A stretch of DNA of 63,603 bases, filler included, from Octopus bimaculoides (taxonomy: Eukaryota): the NCBI RefSeq assembly GCF_001194135.2. It is 5 parts of 4 records of this genome, joined end to end, with 100 filler letters (N's around TTAATTAATTAA, not from the genome) between each part and the next. Parts side by side here need not be neighbours in the genome. Positions count along the whole stretch, not along the records: positions 1 to 13,886 come from NC_068998.1; 4 more parts are not named here. One strand, given 5' to 3'. Positions within the stretch are counted from its first letter, which is position 1. Each line of letters starts with the position of its first letter. A program made the translations under genes and the position numbers. The notes below the pieces were generated by a model. That model was not told the DNA's origin. It ran no database searches and saw only the letters and a list, made by a program, of their open reading frames with translations. Below, in pieces: positions 812 to 13,185 of the stretch.

Positions 812-3090
812 AGTGTGACTTGAAAAGAAAACTTGTTTAAAAAGGAACAACCTTCTGTACAATTGTAATTTTCAAATGATAATTTTACTTCTTTGTTTTA
901 AAAAAGTATATATATATATATATATATATATATGACCAGTTGGTTCATTAATTGCATGTTAAAAAATACATATATATTCAGAAAAAAAAAATCTGTTAAA
1001 ATTGTGTTTGAAATTTGTTTCAGGAATTATGAATGTATGAAATTTTATTTCTCTTTTAATTTCACATATTTTATGTATATTTTAAAACTTTCAACAGTTT
1101 TCTCGCTAGAATGTTTCAAATTTAAAATGAAACAAAAAAAATGAATAAAATGAAGAACTATAAAATGTATGACCCAAACCCCTAAAAAATGTAGCAAAAA
1201 AATATGAAAAAATGTGATAATAGAAGAAAAAATACAAAGCAAACATTTTAAAATTATGACTGTGGATGGTCAATGGAAACAGCTAGACACACCATCTGCA
1301 TGGAACCTGAACAGTAAAGTAAGTGCTAGCATACTCGATGTAGATATAATTAATTAATTAAAATTGTAACCATCAGGGATAAGAACAATCATTTTTGGAA
1401 TGATTAAATCTGGTCAGAAAAGGAAGGGGAGACAACCCTGAAATGAATTTTTAATTAATTGTGGTTAATTAAAAGAAGTATAACACCATGGCAGGGAGCA
1501 GGTGTGATTTTTAGTCGTATGGTGAAAATTCTGGAGGATTGGTGTTAAAAATGTTTCACTGATTCAGACTCAACTGTAATTATAATTTTGGAAATGTTCT
1601 TGTGTAACAAGTGATTTGATTTGCAATCGTGTTTTGAAATTAAAACAATAGCAGCATGGAAGGCAAATGTTAGCCATTCAAAGCAGACTGTTAACTTCAC
1701 TTAAACATTTACTATTTATTTTTTAACAATAATTAAGTCTTTACCTGTCACTATGCTGCAGGAACAAATATTTGTTAATCATGCATGTACCTTCATAAAT
1801 TGTTCAAAGAGGAAGTATCTTTTTAAAGTCAGTGTTGCATTGTCTATATGCTGAAAAACATACAGAAACATACACACACACAACCAAAAGAAATAATTAT
1901 ATGTATTATATATATATAAATATAGTCTTTTTTGAAGTCTGTGTTGTGTTGTGTTGACAGACTTGCACTTAAAATTCCCTCATTTTTTATCAAAATTTGT
2001 TAGTTAAAAAGGTGACAATACTACCTATGTATCTAACTTTCACGCATACACTCTCTCTCTCTCTCTCACTGTATTTCTCTCTCAACACAACTTTTCTCCT
2101 CCCCTTCTTCCCCCTCTCCACACAGATGATGTTATGGACAGACAGATGGAGATCAGCTTCTCTTTTTTAATATAAGATTATCAATGATTTCCTTCGATTA
2201 ATAGGAAGGAGGAAAAAAATGATGCAATGTTCATGTCATTTTCAGGAGCATTGGTGAGGTAAGTGATGTAAAGAGGAAAAATCTATCTTCAGCCAGATAT
2301 AAATACTAAACCTGTTACATGATCTCTTCACATGGTATTCAGCTATTAATTCTTAACTATTGTTTTATTTTCTGACTAGCTACAAGAGTCCAATGAAGGC
2401 GCATGACCTGGTGGCTAGAATATCGTAGCTTTGATCCCCAGATAGGGAAGAAAATTGTTGTGTGATAAGCTCTGGCATCAAGGTAGAATTTGAACCCAGA
2501 TTTGTTAGCACACTGGGTGAAATGCTTAGCAGTATTACATCTGCCGCTATATTCTGAGTTCAAATTCCACCAAGATCGACTTTGCCTTTCATTTTTTTGG
2601 GGTCGATTAAATAAGTACCAGTCATGCACTGGGGTTAATATAATTGACTAAATCCCCTTCCCCAAGCTGCACTTGTGGCAAAAATTTGAAATTATCATTA
2701 AGGCACCAATCTTACAGAATTGTTAGCATGCAGGGTAAAATGCCTTAGCGAAGGTAGAGGTATTGTTTTCAGTTGTGTTTGTTTGTCCGTGGACAAGATA
2801 TCTCAAGAACTGCTGGATAGAATTTAATGAAACTTTCAGGGATGTTTGGCCTCATAACTGGCAGAAACTGATTAGATTCTGGGATCGATCAAGTACTAGA
2901 CAAAGATTCTGGATTATTTTTCCGCTGTTTTACTTAATTTTTGAAAGTGGTCAGGTTCAATTCTATTATTCTCGTTTTGTGAGAGCAGTTGAGTTTATTT
3001 CAGAAATTCACATTTTAAAAATCATCTCCAGCTAATCATTGAGAAGACGTTGATGTTGACTTGGCAGAGGTTTGTGCTCCCTGAGTGCTC

Positions 3091-3142
<52 letters not shown>

Positions 3143-3350
3143 AAATTATTTAAAAAAAAAACAGAATTAATTATTATTATTATTATTAAAGCAGCAAGCT
3201 GGCAGAACTATTAGCATGCCAGGCAAAATGCTTAGTCACATTTCAACAATCTTCAAGTTCCGAGTTCAAATTTCACCAAGGATGTAATCAACTAGTCCCA
3301 TCCCCCAAATTTCAGGCCTTGTGCTTTAGTAGAAAGCATTATTATTACTA

Positions 3351-3500: not shown

Positions 3501-3623
3501 GGTGTTCTACTTTTACATTTGGTAGTTGAGTGCTGATACTTCCAAGTGTATCAATTATTATTGGTATCACATCTACTCGCCTCATTGACCACAACCTTCA
3601 TTATTATTATTATTATTATTATT

Positions 3624-5260
3624 TAAGACATCACACAGTATCCAATATTGTGATGTTGATTGAAGATATTGCATACCAGGTGTTTGTACTGTCTGCCAAG
3701 TCACAGCAAGGACCTTAGACAGACAGTACTTTACACAATATGCATGCAGTTCCAAATCATGCTGATTTTTGCAATACACATAGATTGTAGGGTACTTCTA
3801 AAGTTTCCAGATGTTTTTTTCAGGTTGGGTAGTATTGAACCCACTGCTCCAATGACAATAGGGACAACTTTTATACTTGACTCTCGTAGCTGCCACATCT
3901 TAGCAATCTCAATTCTCAGGTTTCCATATCTATCAATCTTTTCTCTTTCTTTCGTGATATGTTGATCTCCTGGCACTGCCACATCAATTATTAGGCACTC
4001 GTTTGTCCCTCCCAAAGGTTACTATATTTGGTCTTTGGTGCTCTAACACGTTGTCTGTCTGAAAGTCAAACTGCCAGAGGATTTTTGCCTTCTCCTTTTC
4101 GTCCATTGCTTTCCGGTGTATGTTGGTACAAAGTACCAATTAACTCGTGTCCATACATCTGGCACAGTAGCCAGTGAAGGTTTTGGGCTACCTTGTCGTG
4201 TCTGCACTTGTACTCTTTCTGCACAAGACTTTCACAAGCACTAACAATGTGAGTCATGCCTTGGACCCTCTTCCCACACATTCTGTAGAGGTTTGTTGCA
4301 CTTGTGTGGTATATATATCCCTTTTCACTGAGTTGGTATTCAATGCCTGATCCTGAGCAGCGATGATTAGGCTTTCAATATTCTTTTTTAGGTCACCCTT
4401 ACTGAACCACCTCCATGATTCTTCTTGGTCTTTTAATTTGTTAGCTTCGTGGTGGAACTGACCATGTAATTCCATGCAGAGTAGGGTTTCTTCTCTCTCA
4501 TTGGCTATTTATGATCAGAATTCAGGAGTACTCTCAAGTCCATTTTTGGTAAATCCTTCTGCATTAGCAGCATACTGTAGCAGGTCTTGTTTGCTGTTAA
4601 CCAAATATTCTGTCCTGTTTCTTCTTTCATTGTTGATGCACTCCCTCACGCTAATCAGCCCCTCTTCATGTGGAGCCTGTGTACATTCGCTTTAAGGTGG
4701 AGGGCACCATGCATTGTCATTGTCTTTCAGGTAGTGCAACTGAGTTGGTTAATCTCCACTTGTGTCCATTTCAGGATGGGTGCACTATAGCAGACTAAAG
4801 CAACAGCCAATATGTTGATGGCAGTCACAAGGTTCCTTGAGTTGAGTTTTGATTTCAAGAGAAATTTGAGACGCTTGAATTATGCAGTGATGACCTTGTC
4901 TTTCATTTCTCTGTGTGAGATATAGTCCACCTCCTGGATCCCAAGGTACTTGTACCCATCATCATCTGGGTCTTCCATTCTCACTCTGTTTGGCAATTCT
5001 ATGCTCCTACCTTCTGCTCTTTTCCCCCATTTCAAAGTAAGCACAGCACACTTTGAGATACCAAATTCCATCCCTAAATCCTCACTGCATATCTGCACAG
5101 TCTCAACCAGCCTCTTCATTTCAGGCTTTGTGGCACAAACAGTTTCAAATCATGCATGAAGAGGTGGTTGAGACGAGGTCCATTCTTTCTCAGCTCATAG
5201 TGCACATTGTCTTTACACAGGACTACAGAAAGTGGGATTAAGGCTATAACAAATAACAAA
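3624..5260 (-). mobile_element. 5'-truncated R4/Dong-like non-LTR retrotransposon (RT C-terminus, CCHC knuckle, REL endonuclease), frameshifted
   Basis: LFMHDLKLF (YADD-like), YKYLG, CGKRVQGMTHIVSAC, RHDKVA, IIDVAVP...EKIDRY, VVPIVIGAVG; (TAA)n directly abuts both ends (3601-3623, 5261-5283). Confidence 0.9.
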
Positions 5261-7067
5261 TTATTATTATTATTATTATTATTAAGGTGGTGGATTAGCA
5301 GACTCATTGAAGTCTTAGACAAAATATCCATCTCACATTATTTGTTCCAGCTCTTCACATTCTGAGACCAAATTCCACTAAGTTCAGCTTTGTCTTTCAT
5401 CCTCTCAGAATCAATAAGATAAAATCTTAGTATAGTACTGGGGTTGATATAATTGATTACCCCTCATCGAAAGTTTTTGGCCTTGTACCTTTCTTAAAAA
5501 CAATTATCACTATGAAAATTATTATCATAATTAAACATTCTGTTAAGAGATATTGTTGTTGTTCTTCTTTAGCCTCAGGTCAGCCTTCACCAAGCAGACC
5601 TGTGTTCAAAAGCATTTCATCTTTTTTCATATATCTTTTTTTATGCAGGCATAGTACAACTAGAATTACATGTCATTCTCTTTTTTAAGATGGTAGAGTG
5701 TGCTAAGAAGGAGATTTGGCTGCTACTTCTAGGAGGTTCAACAAGATCTTATTGTCCTATTAGCTTACATTGCAAGGAGTTCATAGAAATGGTAGAATTT
5801 TATAACAAACATTCTTCATATTTTTGGCTGTATGAGAACAGTGAGCAAGCAGAATTCTTAGCACACCAGGCAGAATGCTTGCTGTCCATCCTTATGTTCT
5901 GAAGTTGACTTTACCTTTCATTCTTTTATGGGTTTGATAAAATAAGTACCAGTTGAACACTGGAGTCGATTGTATCGACCCCAGTGTGATATAATCGACT
6001 TAATGCCTTCCCCAAAATTGCTGGCCTTGTGCCAAAATTTGAAATCAGTATTTAGAAACAGACAAGGCAGTGAGCTGGCAGAATGGTAGGTACACCAAGG
6101 AAAAGGCTTAGAGGCGTTTCATCCACCTTTATGTTCTGTGTTCAACTTTGCCTTTCATCCTTTTGGGGGGTTAATAAAATAAGTACTAGTTGAGCACTGG
6201 GGTCGATGTAATCGGTTTACCCCCTTCCCTCAAAGCTGCTGGCCTTGTGCCAAAATTTGAAATCAATCATATTGGCTGTATGTACACTTTGCATCTTTTA
6301 GCTTCTATCATTGCTTCAGTTATTGGACAGTGGCCATGCTGGGGCACCACTTTGTAGGGTTTAGTTGAACAAATCAATCCCAGTACTTAATTTTTTAAGT
6401 CTAGCACTTATTTTATCAGTCTCTTTTGCCAAACTGCTAAGTTACTGGATATAAACAAACACCGGCTGTCAAGTGATAGAGGAGAGACGCACACACACAT
6501 ATATATACATATATGTGCACATGCAACATACTTACAACACATGCACACACATATACATACACACAAACATACATGCATACACACATACATACATACACAC
6601 ATACATACATATACATACATGCATATACATACACACACATATATCATCATTATCATCATCAATATTTAACATCTGCTTTCCATGCTGGCATGGGTTGGAT
6701 GGTTTGACAGGAGCTGGCAAGCCAGAGAGCTGTACCAGGTCCATTGTCTACTTTAGCATGGTTCTTATGGCTAGATGGCTTCCTAATGCCAACCACTTTA
6801 CAGACTGGACTGCCTGCTTTTTATGTGGCACCAACATTGGTGCTTTTTACATGGCACTAACAAGAGAGGTCACCAAGGTGGCTGAGAGGTTAATTTTGAC
6901 ATGCTTCTACATAGTTTCTGTTTACCAAATTCACTCACAGAGCATTGAACGATCCAGAAGCTATTGTAGAAAACACTTGCCAAGGTGCTATGTAGTGGCA
7001 TTGAACCTGAAAACATGGTTGCAAAGTGGGTTTCTTAATTACATGGCCATGCCTATTTATGAAAATT

Positions 7068-7105
<38 letters not shown>

Positions 7106-7435
7106 GAAATGAAAGATATTTAAAAATATATGAAAATCCAGTTTACCTGGTTTCATTAATCACTACTGTGGGCTCACAAGGTTATATAGGCTGAAACAAC
7201 AGACCCCAAAGTGTCAGCCCCATAAAAGTGTTGCTTGGAGTAAACTGCCCCTCAGTCCTACAGTTATTTTTATTGATATTTAACAGAACAACAGAGTGAC
7301 TCAAGGGCCAACACATGAAACCTTGAGTCACTCTGTTACTTCTGCTAAATATTAATAAAAACATGCATGTACTCATATTTTGAGTTCTATTTTTCCTGTT
7401 TGCCTCACAAATACTTAAATCCTAGAGTTGATAAC

Positions 7436-7901: not shown

Positions 7902-8089
7902 TTATCTAAATACACACAATTGACACTCTTCAGTTAATTTAAATATCTTCTCTTAACTACTTTTAATTACACAAATTACATTTAACCAAAAACATACCTA
8001 ACTCTCTTTTGAGATGCTGATGAAAGGATGAAAGGCAAAGTTGAGCTTGGTGGAATTTGAAGTCAGAACAAAAAGACAGACGAAATACC

Positions 8090-8348
8090 TTATTTACATT
8101 ATTTACAATTGACGGATATTTGTCCTCATCTTGTTTGTTGCTAACACAACGTTTTGGTTGATATACACTCCAGCCTTCATCAGGTGTCTTGGGGAAATTT
8201 CAAATCTGGGTCCTCATTCCTAAGGTATTTTTCGATGTTATTATTATTATTCAGGTTACTGCCTAGAATCGAACTCGGAATCTTAGGGTTAAGAGCACGG
8301 GCTATTAACCCCAAGATGCCGAGTTTGATTCCAGGCAGTGGCCTTAAA

Positions 8349-8379
<31 letters not shown>

Positions 8380-8561
8380 TCGAAAAATACCTTAGGAATG
8401 AAAACCCAGGTTCAAAATTTCCCCAAGACACCTGATGAAGGCTGGAGGATATATCAGCCGAAACATTGTGTTAACAACAAGATGAGGACAAATATCCGTC
8501 AATTGTAAATAATGTAAATAATGTACATAATTCCTCATCTCTTAAATATAGAATTGTAAGG
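8090..8561. mobile_element. Palindromic dimer of tRNA-headed, hammerhead-bearing element (copy 1), inserted into a SINE
   Basis: Inverted arms meeting at 8287-8310; 9-bp TSD CGAAATACC at 8081-8089 and 8562-8570 splits a family-2 SINE. Confidence 0.85.
8427..8472 (+). ncRNA. Hammerhead motif copy (ACGT mutated to ACAT); further degenerate copies at 8143-8188(-), 12374-12410(+), 14956-15001(+), 53761-53804(-), 54090-54135(+)
   Basis: GACAC-CTGATGA-A-GGCTG-gaggatatat-CAGCC-GAAA-CATT-GTGTT. Confidence 0.55.
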
Positions 8562-8714
8562 CGAAATACCACTAAGCATTTTGCCCGGCATGCTAACAAT
8601 TCTGCCAGTACCCTGCCTTAACAACAACAATAATAATGAAGTAGAATATTACATTAAAAACATATCATTTCAGTTAATTAACACAAAGATTTAATTACAA
8701 AGGAAAATATAAAG

Positions 8715-8862: not shown

Positions 8863-9657
8863 CTGTTGAATGAGAAACAAAGAATGGTCAGTATTAAAAA
8901 ATAGTTACATCAGAATAGCTTCTTGTACAGACATGACAGTTTCCAAATTTCTGGCAGAGTGAATTGTGTCATGGTGCTGATTTTCTCACAGGCGGTGCCC
9001 AACTGACTCTACTATACTGTGTAGTTGACAAAATCAAAAACAAACAATGCGCATGCGTGAAATAAAAAATATAAAACGGCGACAATTTACCCATCGCACC
9101 CTGTATATGCACATTTACATTTGTGCGTGTGTGTGTGTGCGTGCGTGTGTGTGCGGATAAGTATGCAGTCATGTGTGTGTGTGTGTGTGTGTGTGTGCAT
9201 GTATGTGCACATTTGTTTTTTGTGTGTGCATATATATAAGCGCATTTGTTTGTGCATGTGTGTGTATATATATGTGTGCATTTATATTTGTGTGTGGATA
9301 TATGTGCATATTTAAGTGTGCACGTACGTGTGTGTGTGTGTGTGTGTGTTGTCAAGAGGGAGGTAACTTATAAATTGTTATGTCAAAAAAAGGAACACGA
9401 ATTATGTCCCTTGGTGCTTAAGAGTGTTTCTTTGGTAAAGACTCCTTCATTAATAGAAATATAAGAATATAAAGTTTTACTAGCTCCAGCTAAAGGGCTA
9501 TGGATAGGTTGCTTGTTTGCCAACCATGTGATCTCAGGTTCAATCCCACTGTGTGGCACGTTAAGCAAATATTTTGTACTACAGCACTGAGCTGACCAAA
9601 GCCTTCTAAGAGGATTTGGTAGATAAAACCTAAAAGAAGCCTATTGCGTATACATAC

Positions 9658-9688
<31 letters not shown>

Positions 9689-9933
9689 CATGCCTGTATC
9701 TCTGTGTACTCGTGTCTTAATGCCACATGATGGATGTAAATGAACATCCCTGTCATACGAGCGGTGCTGTTCATTTCCAGTCTTTTGACCATGGGAAATA
9801 TTGTCTTATTTGGAGACTGCTGAGTATGGGCAGCAGGAAGAGTATACAGGCATTGGAAACATTTGTCACACAAATTCTATCTGAGCCATGCAAGCATTGA
9901 AGATTCAATGTTAAACGACAATGACAACATATA

Positions 9934-9976
<43 letters not shown>

Positions 9977-10468
9977 TATTCTTTTATTCGATTGTCATTT
10001 GACTGTGGCCATGATGGAGCACTGCCTTTAGTTGAGCAAATNNNNNNNNNNCTTTTATTCGATTGTCATTTGACTGTGGCCATGATGGAGCACTGCCTTT
10101 AGTTGAGCAAATCGACCCCAGGACTTATTCTTTGTAAGCCTAGTACTTATTCTATCAGTTTCTTTTGCCAAACCACTGTTACGGGGATGTAAACATACCA
10201 GCATCAGTTGTCAAGTGATGTTGGGGGGGACAAACACAGACACACAAACACACACACAAACACACACACACACACACATATATATACGACAGGCTTCATT
10301 CAGTTTCCATCTACCAAATCCACTCACAGGCTGTAGTAGTGGCTGTAGTAGAAGATACTTGTCCAAGGTGCCACACAGTGGAACTGAACCCGGAACCATG
10401 TGGTTGGTAAGTAATACACTTACCACGCAGCCACTCCTGCACCTGTATATATATATATATATATATAT

Positions 10469-11636: not shown

Positions 11637-12015
11637 CTAGTGGGTTACAAGATGAAAGAAAGAAACCAACTTACAAATATTTTCAATATGGGACCAGTCG
11701 ATTTCATGGACCCCAATGCTTAACTGATATTTAATTCATCAACTTTCAAAGGATGAAAGGCAAAACAGACCTCAGAAGAATTTGAACTTGGAACATGAAG
11801 ATGAATAAGATGCCATTAAGCACTTTGTCAATGTGCTAAAGATTCTGCCGGCTCACTATAATAATAATAATAATCCTTTCTATAGTACTGGGGAACAAAT
11901 CTCAATATTTTGTCTATTGAATAAGATTTGATAGTTCAAAGAAACATGGGGGTGCTGAGCACAAATCTTTACAGTTTTGCTCTATTAAGTCCTGATTTTG
12001 AAGTTCCAATGGTAA

Positions 12016-12189
12016 TACAGTTCTATATTTAAGAGATGAGGAATTATGTGCATTATTTACATTTGACGGATATTTGTCCTCATCTTGTTTGTTGTTAACA
12101 CAATGTTTCGGCTGATATACCCTCCAGCCTTCTTCAGGTATCTTGGGGAAATTTCGAACCTGGGTTCTCATTCCTAAGGTATTCTTCAA

Positions 12190-12226
<37 letters not shown>

Positions 12227-12447
12227 GTTGTTGTTCAGGTCACTGCTTGGAATCGAACTCGGAATCTTGGGGTTAGTAGCCCACACTCTTAACCACTACG
12301 CCATAACTAACTATTGCAATACCACAACACAATGGCCCCTATCACACTGCAGCAAGTTCGAAATTTCCCCCAAGACACCTGAAGAAGGCTGGAGAGTATA
12401 TCAGCCGAAATGACAAGTATCCATTGAATGTAAATAATGTAAATAAT
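12016..12447. mobile_element. Palindromic dimer (copy 2): full monomer with A/B boxes plus inverted partial arm, in a CFAP298 intron
   Basis: Minus-strand A box TGGCGTAGTGG (12293-12303) and B box GAGTTCGATTCC (12249-12260); TSD GTTCCAATGGT at 12003-12013 and 12448-12458. Confidence 0.85.
12097..12142 (-). ncRNA. Hammerhead motif copy (core CTGAAGA; ACGT mutated to ACAT)
   Basis: GATAC-CTGAAGA-A-GGCTG...CAGCC-GAAA-CATT-GTGTT. Confidence 0.55.
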
Positions 12448-12825
12448 GTTCCAATGGTTTATGATTATAATAAGCAGAAGGCTCGATTTTGTAAGGAAGG
12501 AATAAGTTGATTACATTGACCCCAGTGTACCGCTGGTACTTATTTTATCAACCCCAAAAGGGATGAAAGGCAATGTCGCCCTCAGTAGAATATGAACTCG
12601 GCAACGGACAAAATACAGTCTGAACAGAAATTCCTTTTACATCTGAGTCACACCATTCAACAACCAACAAACTATTGCAAAACCACAATACAATGGGCTC
12701 TATCACACCACAGCAAGTACCAACACACCACCGCAGCAACCATCATCACCACTACAAAACAACAAGTCACCTCATCATTACAACCACCAACAAATTAGCA
12801 AAGTGATGAAAAACAAAACATTTAC

Positions 12826-13059: not shown

Positions 13060-13185
13060 CACAATTACACTAGCGAATACTAGGAACCACAATTACACTA
13101 GGGAATACTAGGAACCACAATTACACTAGCGAATACTAGGAACCACAATTACACTAGCGAATACTAGGAACCACAATTACACTAG
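13060..13185. repeat. 28-bp minisatellite x4.5 (CACAATTACACTAGCGAATACTAGGAAC)
   Basis: Near-identical units, one substitution. Confidence 0.9.

What the first reader, a model, noticed from the sequence alone, without database searches (positions are those of the whole stretch)
12016..12304. tRNA-headed non-autonomous element carrying a Penelope-type hammerhead ribozyme
Seen: the monomer has Pol III A and B boxes, then (AAT/AAC)n, then GACAC-CTGA(T/A)GA-A-GGCTG-loop-CAGCC-GAAA-CG-TT-GTGTT, then a short tail. Eight motif copies lie in four insertions. Known: minimal type I hammerheads with a palindromic stem III (AACGTT) occur in Penelope-like elements and cleave as dimers; Schistosoma SM-alpha repeats combine a Pol III promoter with a hammerhead. 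Inferred: this is a SINE/retrozyme hybrid transcribed by Pol III, processed by self-cleavage and mobilised by a Penelope-like RT/GIY-YIG enzyme rather than a LINE. I do not know whether this family is already catalogued.
Basis: partly seen in the sequence, partly recalled or inferred. Interest (0 to 1): 0.9.

Follow-up and report, generated by a model that had tools for sequence, protein, structure and literature searches.

The report
Octopus SINE carrying a Penelope-type hammerhead
This is a real short mobile element of octopus genomes with a tRNA-type RNA polymerase III promoter in front of a minimal hammerhead-ribozyme module of the kind carried by Penelope-like retrotransposons, and its insertions look Penelope-made rather than LINE-made, which if confirmed would be the first such SINE.

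Summary
12016-12311 (-) is a full copy of a roughly 300-bp octopus repeat. It has a tRNA-type head with A and B boxes 44 nt apart, then (AAC)n(AAT)n, then a body containing GACAC-CUGANGA-A-GGCUGG-loop-UCAGCC-GAAA-CG-U-U-GUGUU. This piece holds four copies in two insertions, not eight in four.

The motif has every defining feature of the minimal hammerheads of Penelope-like elements (PLEs). It never arose in 1500 random windows. Every genomic copy is decayed, mostly at the CpG of the ACGU palindrome, so only the consensus is intact. No Rfam hammerhead model detects it.

Both window insertions are head-to-head pairs of 5'-truncated copies inside a single 11-12-bp target duplication. One arm of each pair carries a 35-nt tail. 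This is PLE-like architecture and is absent from about 13 insertions of the co-resident CORE-type SINE.

A library scan found 131 spurious ORFs translating the same module. Sixteen show tandem arrays, mostly of 129 nt, and seven show inverted junctions. Helix II differs between groups by a compensatory U-A/C-G change.

Not shown: an autonomous PLE sharing the 3' end, Pol III transcription, or cleavage. All copies span the cleavage site, so the transposed RNAs were uncleaved. Verdict: a new variant of a known kind. PLE mobilisation is likely (about 0.6).

The parts
12016..12311 (-). Copy c: the only full-length copy in the window (head, microsatellite, body, tail). This is the finding.
   Evidence: It is 95% identical to the O. 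bimaculoides copy in L001.
12236..12311 (-). tRNA-type head with A box 12303-12293 (TGGCGTAGTGG) and B box 12259-12249 (AGTTCGATTCC).
   Evidence: one match in the window, none in 200 shuffles. The 44-nt spacing equals that of tRNA genes. ARAGORN and the Rfam tRNA model do not recognise it.
12192..12235 (-). Internal microsatellite (AAC)3(AAT)n between head and body.
   Evidence: It is present in a, b, c and L001 with the same junction, AACATYGAARAATACC.
12097..12142 (-). Minimal type I hammerhead motif of copy c. Layout: helix I 12142-12138 with 12101-12097; CUGAAGA 12137-12131; extra A 12130; helix II 12129-12124 with 12115-12110; GAAA 12109-12106. The predicted cleavage site lies between 12102 and 12101. 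In this copy the CpG of the ACGU palindrome has decayed to CA.
   Evidence: The defining features are listed in PMC4209133.
12016..12050 (-). 35-nt 3' tail, CACATAATTCCTCATCTCTTAAATATAGAACTGTA. It is present in c and b and in the peptides P0001, P0129 and P0139. It is absent from a, d and the L001 copy.
12353..12447 (+). Copy d: a 5'-truncated inverted partner of c. It carries a partial hammerhead (12374-12410), a 26-nt internal deletion after GAAA, and ends at (GTAAATAAT)2.
12312..12352 (+). Filler between arms c and d. It copies nearby DNA: 12305-12357 is 84-87% identical to 12666-12718.
12003..12013 (.). Left target-site duplication of insertion c+d, GTTCCAATGGT. The right copy lies at 12448-12458.
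   Evidence: the two copies are identical.
12448..12458 (.). Right target-site duplication of insertion c+d.
8090..8299 (-). Copy a: 5'-truncated in the head and without the tail. Its hammerhead (8188-8143) keeps ACGTT but has G12>A and a helix II G>A change.
8287..8558 (+). Copy b: 5'-truncated at head position 21. Hammerhead at 8427-8472, tail at 8524-8558. It is joined head-to-head to a through the 7-nt palindromic microhomology GGGTTAA.
8078..8089 (.). Left target-site duplication of insertion a+b, AGACGAAATACC. The right copy, AGGCGAAATACC, lies at 8559-8570. Joining the flanks restores an uninterrupted CORE-type SINE.
8559..8570 (.). Right target-site duplication of insertion a+b.

Best explanation
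The element is a composite non-autonomous retrotransposon (a SINE) of octopus genomes.

**Structure**
- A tRNA-derived head supplies an internal Pol III promoter.
- An (AAC)n(AAT)n tract links the head to a body of about 180 nt.
- The body is slightly more than one unit of an old, widespread repeat bearing a minimal hammerhead. That is the kind of repeat found in PLE pseudo-LTRs and in animal non-LTR retrozymes.

**Proposed mechanism**
1. Pol III starts in the head and reads through the body, which has no T4 terminator on the sense strand. This step is inferred.
2. The uncleaved linear transcript is reverse-transcribed at a staggered chromosomal break by a PLE-type RT with GIY-YIG endonuclease that recognises the PLE-like 3' module. 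This is inferred from the module's identity and from the insertion architecture.
3. Often both nicked strands prime cDNA. The result is two 5'-truncated copies joined head-to-head, by microhomology or by templated filler, inside one 11-12-bp target duplication. Priming occurs either at the true 3' end (35-nt tail present) or about 35 nt upstream at (GTAAATAAT)n. The geometry is shown; the mechanism behind it is inferred.
4. The hammerhead is intact in the family consensus and needs a partner molecule, through the ACGU palindrome, to be active. For this SINE it is probably inherited baggage or part of the fold the RT recognises, not an obligatory processing step. Cleavage would separate the promoter from the 3' end, and all copies span the cleavage site.
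For: **Source organism.** An ORF across the element hits O. bimaculoides proteins. A fifth copy lies on O. bimaculoides chromosome CM046617.1.

**Head and body move as one unit.** Both arms of pair a/b contain part of the head, the microsatellite and the body. In L001 one perfect 12-bp TSD encloses the head, a nested LINE and the body.

**Promoter.** Box pattern and spacing are canonical. The consensus has no TTTT on the sense strand.

**Hammerhead.** All core nucleotides and all four PLE min-HHR hallmarks of PMC4209133 are present. The motif gave 0 hits in 1500 random windows. Helices I and II form in the MFE of the isolated domain.

**Superfamily.**
- 131 cluster representatives translate the same module.
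- 16 have 2 or more units, mostly 43 aa (129 nt) apart.
- 7, plus P0129, cross antisense-to-sense head-to-head junctions.
- When units are anchored on the 3' block only, core-encoded residues are 82-92% kept. R, H and C at the 15.2/16.2 codon number 59, 23 and 15, as expected from CpG decay of an ancestral CG.
- Octopus-type members have U10.4-A11.4 (W...Q), where most others have C-G (R...R).

**PLE-like architecture.** Two of three insertions are inverted pairs, against 0 of about 13 for the CORE-type SINE in the same 55 kb (Fisher p=0.025). PMC8557442 states that such tandem/inverted structures and the 30-40-bp tail are not seen in LINE TPRT.

**Context.** O. vulgaris has 31 recently active PLE families (PMC13282606). 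In Xenopus, retrozymes derive from PLE pLTRs (bioRxiv 10.64898/2026.07.22.740005).
Against: - No autonomous PLE, or any RT gene, with this 3' end was seen. Only 55 kb of octopus DNA was available. A tblastn search with a PLE consensus recalled from memory found nothing in it.
- The L001 copy is a plain single insertion with a TSD, as a LINE-mobilised SINE would be.
- The tail-less 3' end is a 9-nt tandem repeat, which recalls CR1/L2-type LINE tails.
- P0129 shows a pair in which both arms have the tail, so "tail at one end only" is not a rule.
- The targets are not microsatellites, unlike the bias reported for some PLEs.
- Shared private variants between the arms of a pair are few and could be coincidence.
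- No Rfam hammerhead hit. There are no compensatory changes within the octopus family. Folding z-score is -0.75.
- The taxa of the 131 relatives are unknown.
- The between-group covariation is a single event read from amino acids. The within-group association is weak and the units are not independent (odds ratio 2.7, p=0.04).
Confidence: 0.6

Rival explanations
1. It is an ordinary LINE-dependent tRNA SINE whose body happens to derive from a PLE or retrozyme fragment. A LINE with a (GTAAATAAT)n-type 3' end mobilises it. The hammerhead is a passenger.
For: - The 3' end of three copies is a 9-nt tandem repeat.
- TSDs of 11-12 bp are also typical of LINE TPRT.
- The L001 copy is a simple full-length insertion.
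- Octopus genomes have many active LINE families (PMC13282606).
Against: - Two of three insertions are head-to-head pairs in which both arms include the 3' end. L1-type twin priming does not produce this, and none of about 13 CORE-type SINE insertions nearby shows it.
- The same inverted junctions and tandem arrays recur in distant relatives.
- No LINE fragment in the 55 kb shares the 3' region.
Confidence: 0.25
2. It is a true retrozyme life cycle. The transcript self-cleaves as a dimer, is circularised, and the circle is the template for reverse transcription.
For: - The consensus hammerhead is intact and has the dimer-type ACGU palindrome.
- Relatives occur as tandem arrays, mostly of 129 nt, with one hammerhead per unit.
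- Animal retrozymes make circRNAs (PMC7229834).
Against: - All five octopus DNA copies are collinear, starting in the head or truncated from the 5' side, and running through the cleavage site. None is permuted or tandem, and none begins at GTGTT.
- There is only one hammerhead per element. Cleavage would therefore split the promoter from the 3' end.
- In inverted pairs the two ribozymes lie on opposite strands.
Confidence: 0.1
3. Two unrelated elements merely sit side by side. One is a tRNA SINE ending in (AAT)n. The other is a separate hammerhead element that prefers to insert into (AAT)n tracts.
For: - Some PLEs have a microsatellite insertion bias (PMC8557442).
- In L001 the body follows the (AAT)n tail of a LINE.
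- Relatives have other microsatellites, such as (ATG)n and (ATA)n-like tracts, in front of the body.
Against: - All four heads seen are attached to bodies through the same junction.
- Both arms of pair a/b carry head, microsatellite and body within one TSD, so one template held all three.
- Six other (AAT)n-type tracts in the window carry no body.
Confidence: 0.04
4. The hammerhead resemblance is a chance motif in a SINE master copy that was amplified with it.
For: - No Rfam hammerhead hit.
- Unexceptional folding energy.
- No within-family covariation.
Against: - 0 hits in about 41 Mb of random sequence, even with the relaxed descriptor.
- Features not required by the descriptor also fit PLE min-HHRs: the extra nucleotide, the 6-bp helix II and AACGUU.
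- Core-encoded residues are kept across diverged groups of relatives.
Confidence: 0.02

Closest known systems
Minimal type I hammerheads of Penelope-like elements (Cervera & de la Pena 2014, PMC4209133; Lunse, Weinberg & Breaker 2017)
   Same: - Core CUGANGA...GAAA.
- Short helix I (5 bp) and long helix II (6 bp).
- An unpaired nucleotide between A9 and G10.1, and a G10.1-C11.1 pair.
- No loop III, and a palindromic 15.2-16.2, so helix III can form only between two molecules.
- Thousands of such motifs are dispersed in animal genomes, mostly outside full PLEs.
   Different: - Here the motif is not in a pseudo-LTR flanking an RT/GIY-YIG ORF. It lies behind a tRNA-type Pol III promoter in a 300-bp element.
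- Activity was not tested.
Animal non-LTR retrozymes (Cervera & de la Pena 2020, PMC7229834; Li, Clavereau & Pollet 2026 preprint)
   Same: - Non-coding hammerhead repeats thought to be non-autonomous derivatives of PLE pLTRs.
- Relatives of this module form tandem arrays, mostly of 129 nt.
   Different: - Retrozymes are tandem, are reported to lack promoters (PMC7761336) and give circRNAs.
- The octopus copies are single or inverted, never tandem in the DNA seen. They have one hammerhead and a Pol III head.
- The unit of 129 nt is shorter than the 150-300 nt reported.
Schistosoma SM-alpha / Sj-alpha SINE-like elements (Ferbeyre et al. 1998; Laha et al. 2000; cited in PMC8490949)
   Same: A short dispersed retroposon that combines a Pol III-type promoter with a type I hammerhead. 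The Pol III promoter detail is my own recollection.
   Different: - SM-alpha has a canonical, active hammerhead with loop-loop contacts. This element has the minimal PLE type.
- No sequence similarity was tested.
- Different phylum.
tRNA-derived SINEs, including the octopus OK, OR1 and OR2 families (Ohshima & Okada 1994) and CORE-SINEs
   Same: - tRNA-type head with A and B boxes.
- About 300 bp, dispersed, with TSDs and 5' truncation.
- It sits beside a CORE-type SINE in the same window.
   Different: - Known SINEs end in a LINE-derived tail and insert singly.
- This one ends in a PLE/retrozyme-like module and often inserts as inverted pairs.
Helenus and Ajax (Kojima 2024, PMC10886601)
   Same: Small-RNA-gene-derived non-autonomous elements that depend on something other than a LINE.
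   Different: Those are LTR-retrotransposon derivatives. This element would be the PLE counterpart.

Membership tests
tRNA-derived SINE | Internal Pol III A and B boxes at tRNA-like spacing. | tested here: met
   TGGCGTAGTGG and AGTTCGATTCC lie 44 nt apart, start to start. The pattern has 1 match in the window and 0 in 200 shuffles. The L001 copy shows the same arrangement.
tRNA-derived SINE | The head is recognisable as a tRNA (cloverleaf). | tested here: not met
   ARAGORN finds none. The Rfam tRNA model gives no hit at E<=10 on a 111-nt slice. This is common for old SINE heads.
tRNA-derived SINE | Short, non-coding, dispersed copies with target-site duplications and 5' truncation. | tested here: met
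   TSDs are 11-12 bp. Copies a, b and d are truncated. The ORF has no Pfam family and is broken in other copies.
tRNA-derived SINE | The 3' end is shared with a partner LINE. | tested here: inconclusive
   No LINE fragment in the 55 kb shares the 3' region. No genome-wide search was possible.
Hammerhead ribozyme, PLE minimal type I | Conserved core C3 U4 G5 A6 N7 G8 A9 / G12 A13 A14 / A15.1-U16.1 / H17. | tested here: met
   The core is complete in the CpG-restored consensus. Copies b and c differ only at G16.2. Copies a, d and L001 each have one or more further lesions.
Hammerhead ribozyme, PLE minimal type I | Extra nucleotide between 9 and 10.1, a G10.1-C11.1 pair, a long helix II, a short helix I, and a palindromic 15.2-16.2 without loop III (PMC4209133). 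| tested here: met
   CG is retained in copy a, and R is the majority residue at that codon in 105 related units.
Hammerhead ribozyme, PLE minimal type I | Detection by curated covariance models. | tested here: not met
   No Rfam hammerhead family hits at gathering score or at E<=10. This is expected for motifs that lack helix III.
Hammerhead ribozyme, PLE minimal type I | Compensatory changes in the helices. | tested here: inconclusive
   Within the octopus family there are 0 pairs with changes on both sides. Between groups, read from peptides, 10.4-11.4 is U-A in octopus-type members and C-G in others. The within-group association is weak (p=0.04).
Hammerhead ribozyme, PLE minimal type I | Self-cleavage. 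| not testable with these tools
   This needs in-vitro transcription of monomer and dimer.
Non-LTR retrozyme | Head-to-tail tandem repeats, each with a hammerhead. | tested here: not met
   There is no tandem copy in the window or in L001. Distant relatives are tandem.
Non-LTR retrozyme | Abundant circular RNA of unit length. | not testable with these tools
   No RNA data were available.
Non-autonomous derivative of a Penelope-like element | Sequence shared with the pLTR or 3' end of an autonomous PLE of the same genome. | not testable with these tools
   No octopus PLE sequence could be fetched. A tblastn search with a recalled PLE consensus found nothing in the 55 kb, and a viral-contig scan found nothing.
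Non-autonomous derivative of a Penelope-like element | PLE insertion architecture: 5' truncation, an adjacent inverted 5'-truncated copy, a 30-40-bp tail at one end, and a variable TSD (PMC8557442). | tested here: met
   Two of three insertions show it. The same junction type occurs in P0129 and in 7 distant relatives.
Non-autonomous derivative of a Penelope-like element | Insertion bias for microsatellites (some PLE clades). | tested here: not met
   The three targets are unique or SINE sequence.

The most novel reading that the evidence does not exclude
This is the first SINE class that depends on Penelope-like RT/GIY-YIG machinery rather than on a LINE. It arose when a Pol III tRNA head captured one unit of an ancient hammerhead repeat, so it links SINEs, PLE pseudo-LTRs and animal retrozymes in a single lineage. 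Because it often inserts as head-to-head pairs, it would also seed ready-made long hairpins (dsRNA) across octopus genomes, where A-to-I editing is exceptionally active.
Probability: 0.5. Interest if true: 0.78.

Novelty: new variant of a known kind. Interest (0 to 1): 0.66.

Why it matters
- **Definition of a SINE.** SINEs are defined as LINE parasites. A Pol III-driven element riding on PLE machinery would widen that definition, as Helenus and Ajax did for LTR elements.
- **An open question.** It would give a concrete answer to what the thousands of dispersed minimal hammerheads in animal genomes are, since most lie outside full PLEs. It would also address how promoter-less retrozyme or pLTR units can acquire their own transcription.
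- **A test system.** It offers a small, abundant substrate with which to study the poorly understood PLE integration reaction: double priming, tails, snap-back junctions and templated filler.
- **Octopus annotation.** SINEs make up 11.6% of the O. vulgaris genome and are mostly unclassified (PMC13282606), so classifying one family by its partner matters for annotation. Inverted pairs are candidate dsRNA sources.

Tried and rejected
- **Rfam.** Searches at gathering score and at E<=10 on the whole piece, on a 101-nt slice and on the L001 head gave no hammerhead and no tRNA. The sub-threshold plant-miRNA hits at 8193-8422 are just the inverted pair.
- **Exact-pattern scans.** The hammerhead pattern gave 0 hits in viral and metagenome contigs. 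A 22-nt 3'-region pattern gave only three chance matches in metagenome and bacterial contigs, with no further similarity.
- **Harvesting more octopus DNA.**
  - P0002's gene range is too long, and P0001 is not on record.
  - P0052 gave 41 kb with many gaps.
  - P0015 turned out not to be octopus.
  - Window ORFs are not on record.
  - The last protein search, with a CORE-SINE peptide, found no candidate.
- **Finding a PLE.** A tblastn search with a PLE consensus recalled from memory found nothing in the window or L001. A viral-contig scan with it found nothing. These negatives are weak, because the query was recalled rather than real.
- **Literature.** The motif and head strings occur in no held paper. 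Supplements of the octopus repeat papers hold no consensus library.
- **Rejected ideas.**
  - The element's 91-aa ORF is not a gene. It has no Pfam family and is broken in other copies.
  - The long hits P0141, P0163 and P0218 are low-complexity artefacts.
  - "The arms of a pair are each other's closest relatives" does not hold overall. Pair a/b is 89.6% identical, less than c versus L001 at 95%.
Full report
**Source and observation**

The window is octopus DNA. The frame that is open across the element hits two Octopus bimaculoides proteins. A further copy lies on O. bimaculoides chromosome CM046617.1 (locus L001).

Read on the minus strand, 12016-12311 is a full copy of a repeat of about 300 bp. 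BLAST of this monomer against the piece finds four copies:
- a: 8090-8299 (-)
- b: 8287-8558 (+)
- c: 12016-12311 (-), the finding
- d: 12353-12447 (+)

**Head**

TGGCGTAGTGG (12303-12293) and AGTTCGATTCC (12259-12249) match the Pol III A and B box consensus. Their starts are 44 nt apart, as at positions 8 and 52 of a tRNA gene. The combined pattern occurs once in the window and in none of 200 shuffles.

ARAGORN and the Rfam tRNA model do not recognise the head, even on a 111-nt slice of the less decayed L001 copy. "tRNA-type promoter" is therefore shown, while "tRNA" is not.

The sense strand of the consensus has no TTTT, so Pol III could read through the element. This is weak evidence.

**Hammerhead**

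The consensus is GACAC CUGAUGA A GGCUGG AGGGUAUA UCAGCC GAAA C G U U | GUGUU. It contains:
- all core nucleotides;
- a 5-bp helix I and a 6-bp helix II;
- an unpaired A between A9 and G10.1, and a G10.1-C11.1 pair;
- no loop III;
- a palindromic ACGU, which can form helix III only between two molecules.

These are exactly the traits that Cervera and de la Pena list for the minimal hammerheads of Penelope-like elements, and that they argue make a chance origin unlikely (PMC4209133).

The sequence pattern occurs four times in the window and never in 200 shuffles. A structural descriptor finds b and c, and found nothing in 1500 Markov-1 random windows (about 41 Mb). A broader descriptor finds no other hammerhead family in the 55 kb.

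Caveats:
- No genomic copy passes the strict descriptor. The CpG in ACGU has decayed to CA in b, c and L001 and to TG in the P0002 copy. Copy a keeps CG but has two other lesions, and d has a deletion.
- No Rfam hammerhead model hits at any threshold.
- The five copies give no compensatory change.
- Folding energy is unremarkable (z = -0.75), although helices I and II do form in the MFE of the isolated domain.

**Head and body are one element**

All four heads seen are joined to bodies through the same junction. Both arms of pair a/b contain part of the head, the microsatellite and the body, so one template carried all three.

In L001 a perfect 12-bp duplication, GTTCACCATCTC, encloses the head, (AAT)n(AAC)n, a 5'-truncated LINE with an (AAT)n tail, and the body. 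This is best read as a LINE nested in the element's own microsatellite.

**Insertion architecture**

Insertion a+b interrupts a CORE-type SINE. Joining the flanks in a script and removing one duplicate restores an ungapped copy of that SINE. The duplication is AGACGAAATACC / AGGCGAAATACC.

Insertion c+d is flanked by identical GTTCCAATGGT.

In both insertions:
- the two copies lie head-to-head;
- their 3' ends abut the two duplicates, and their truncated 5' ends meet in the middle;
- the join is a 7-nt palindromic microhomology (a/b) or a 41-49-nt filler (c/d). The filler is an 84-87% copy of DNA 360 bp away;
- one arm ends with an extra 35 nt (b, c), and the other stops at (GTAAATAAT)n with 2-4 nt of microhomology to the target.

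This geometry means that both nicked strands primed cDNA on the 3' region of the element. L1-type twin priming would invert an internal segment instead.

As an internal control, about 13 insertions of the CORE-type SINE in the same 55 kb include no such pair (Fisher p=0.025). The numbers are small.

**A wider family**

A full HMMER scan of 1.8 billion representative proteins with the element's ORF returned 131 hits. All are short unnamed ORFs from ENA and Logan contigs. They are translations of the same module...TPEEG[WR]RTY[QR]PKRCGNNNKDEDNSPKTLNDKNHQASSQKFRQ....

- **Extent of homology.** Similarity covers the hammerhead, the ~90 nt downstream including the "tail" (HNSSSLKYRT against NHQASSQKFRQ), and the ~30 nt upstream.
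- **Tandem arrays.** Sixteen ORFs hold 2-4 units, mostly 43 aa (129 nt) apart. These are retrozyme-like tandem arrays with one hammerhead per unit. The octopus body thus corresponds to about 1.2 units, and its 3' terminus falls at the unit boundary.
- **Inverted junctions.** Seven ORFs, plus the octopus-like P0129, read from an antisense copy straight into a sense copy. These are head-to-head junctions, several of them centred on the helix II hairpin.
- **Core conservation.** With units anchored on the 3' block only, the residues dictated by the core are kept in 82-92% of 105 units. The codon holding C15.2-G16.2 is R 59, H 23, C 15, which is the signature of an ancestral CpG.
- **Covariation.** Octopus-type members encode W...Q (U10.4-A11.4), where most others encode R...R (C-G). 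This is one compensatory change in helix II. Within the large group, W/R and Q/R are weakly associated (odds ratio 2.7, p=0.04). CpG decay is biased towards the products that keep pairing (48:11 and 36:12). These inferences come from amino acids, from non-independent copies and from unknown taxa.

**Mechanism**

I propose four steps, of which only the geometry in step 3 is shown:
1. Pol III transcription from the head. This is inferred.
2. Reverse transcription and integration of the uncleaved linear RNA by a PLE enzyme that recognises the PLE-like 3' module. This is inferred from the module and the architecture.
3. Frequent double priming, giving the inverted pairs. The geometry is shown.
4. 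A hammerhead that is inherited, and perhaps structurally needed, but not an obligatory processing step.

The last point rests on the copies themselves. All run through the predicted GUU|G site, and none starts there, is permuted or is tandem. With a single ribozyme per element, cleavage would cut the promoter off the 3' end.

**Context**

- Octopus genomes carry active PLEs. O. vulgaris has 31 recently active families, and SINEs make up 11.6% of its genome, mostly unclassified (PMC13282606).
- Pairwise JC distances of 0.05-0.17 place these copies near the SINE/LINE wave reported there.
- Animal retrozymes were recently argued to be derivatives of PLE pLTRs and are described as lacking promoters (PMC7761336).
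- I found no paper describing a tRNA-headed PLE-type element. The sequence strings occur in no held text.
- Whether this family equals one of the octopus SINEs of Ohshima and Okada (1994), or a Repbase entry, could not be checked.

**What is missing**

The decisive test is an octopus PLE, or instead a LINE, that shares the element's 3' end. It could not be run, because only 55 kb of octopus DNA was reachable and no PLE lies in it. The other untested points are cleavage, Pol III dependence and genome-wide statistics.

**Verdict**

The SINE plus PLE-type hammerhead reading is well supported. PLE mobilisation is likely (about 0.6). Obligatory self-cleavage is unlikely. It is a new variant of a known kind.

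Noticed in passing
window 3596-5330 (-); L001 14690-16287: The window holds a LINE remnant with RT-type ORFs (4880-5119, 4254-4475, 4066-4281, 3731-4015). Its 3' end runs into (AAT)n at 3596-3623. The closest named relative is O. bimaculoides LOC106876884 (RVT_1). A related 5'-truncated LINE with an (AAT)n tail sits exactly inside the (AAT)n tract of the L001 copy of the element, which suggests a LINE that targets (TAA)n repeats. From memory this is Dong/R4-like, but that was not tested.
   Followed up: partly
window 2496-2645, 2698-2746, 3184-3282, 5282-5412, 5838-5934, 6063-6217, 7962-8089 with 8559-8625, 11746-11857, 12510-12608: A second, commoner tRNA-derived SINE with a CORE-like centre (GCCTTTCATCC..GGGGTCGATAAA). 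It is probably the octopus CORE-SINE of the literature (OR1 or OR2). All copies are single and none forms an inverted pair. It served as the internal control.
   Followed up: partly
window 12305-12357 and 12666-12718: A stretch of about 53 bp between arms c and d is an 84-87% copy of DNA 360 bp downstream. This is templated filler at the junction of the two cDNAs, as in polymerase-theta-type end joining.
   Followed up: partly
window 8086-8525: The a/b pair is a near-perfect long inverted repeat, with arms 85-98% complementary. That is why the plant miRNA models MIR7533 and MIR812 score below threshold there. If transcribed it would form a hairpin of about 200 bp, a possible dsRNA or editing substrate.
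   Followed up: no
P0002 (O. bimaculoides dystrobrevin beta isoform X1 model): The open frame of the element, including the hammerhead-encoded GEGWRVYQPKCC, is annotated as the N-terminal exon of a gene model. This is probably an exonised or mis-annotated SINE copy.
   Followed up: no
window 12156-12185 (-), body upstream of the hammerhead: CCTTAGGAATGAGAACCCAGGTTCGAAATTTCC contains a second B-box-like GGTTCGAAA on the sense strand and a T-arm-like sequence on the antisense strand. The distant relatives encode GIRTGDP at this place, which back-translates to an antisense GGTTCGAATCC. The origin is unclear.
   Followed up: no
window 13060-13101 and 13144-13185: A perfect 42-bp direct repeat with copies 84 bp apart.
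   Followed up: no
window 7265-7362: A strong hairpin with stems of about 40 bp. It gives sub-threshold hits to the plant miRNA models MIR5229 and MIR831 and is possibly a small inverted-repeat element.
   Followed up: no
window 6400-6700 and 9000-10400: Long (TG/CA)-rich and (TATG)-like microsatellite tracts give the sub-threshold mir-297, mir-466 and mir-3149 hits. A 10-N assembly gap lies near 10040.
   Followed up: no
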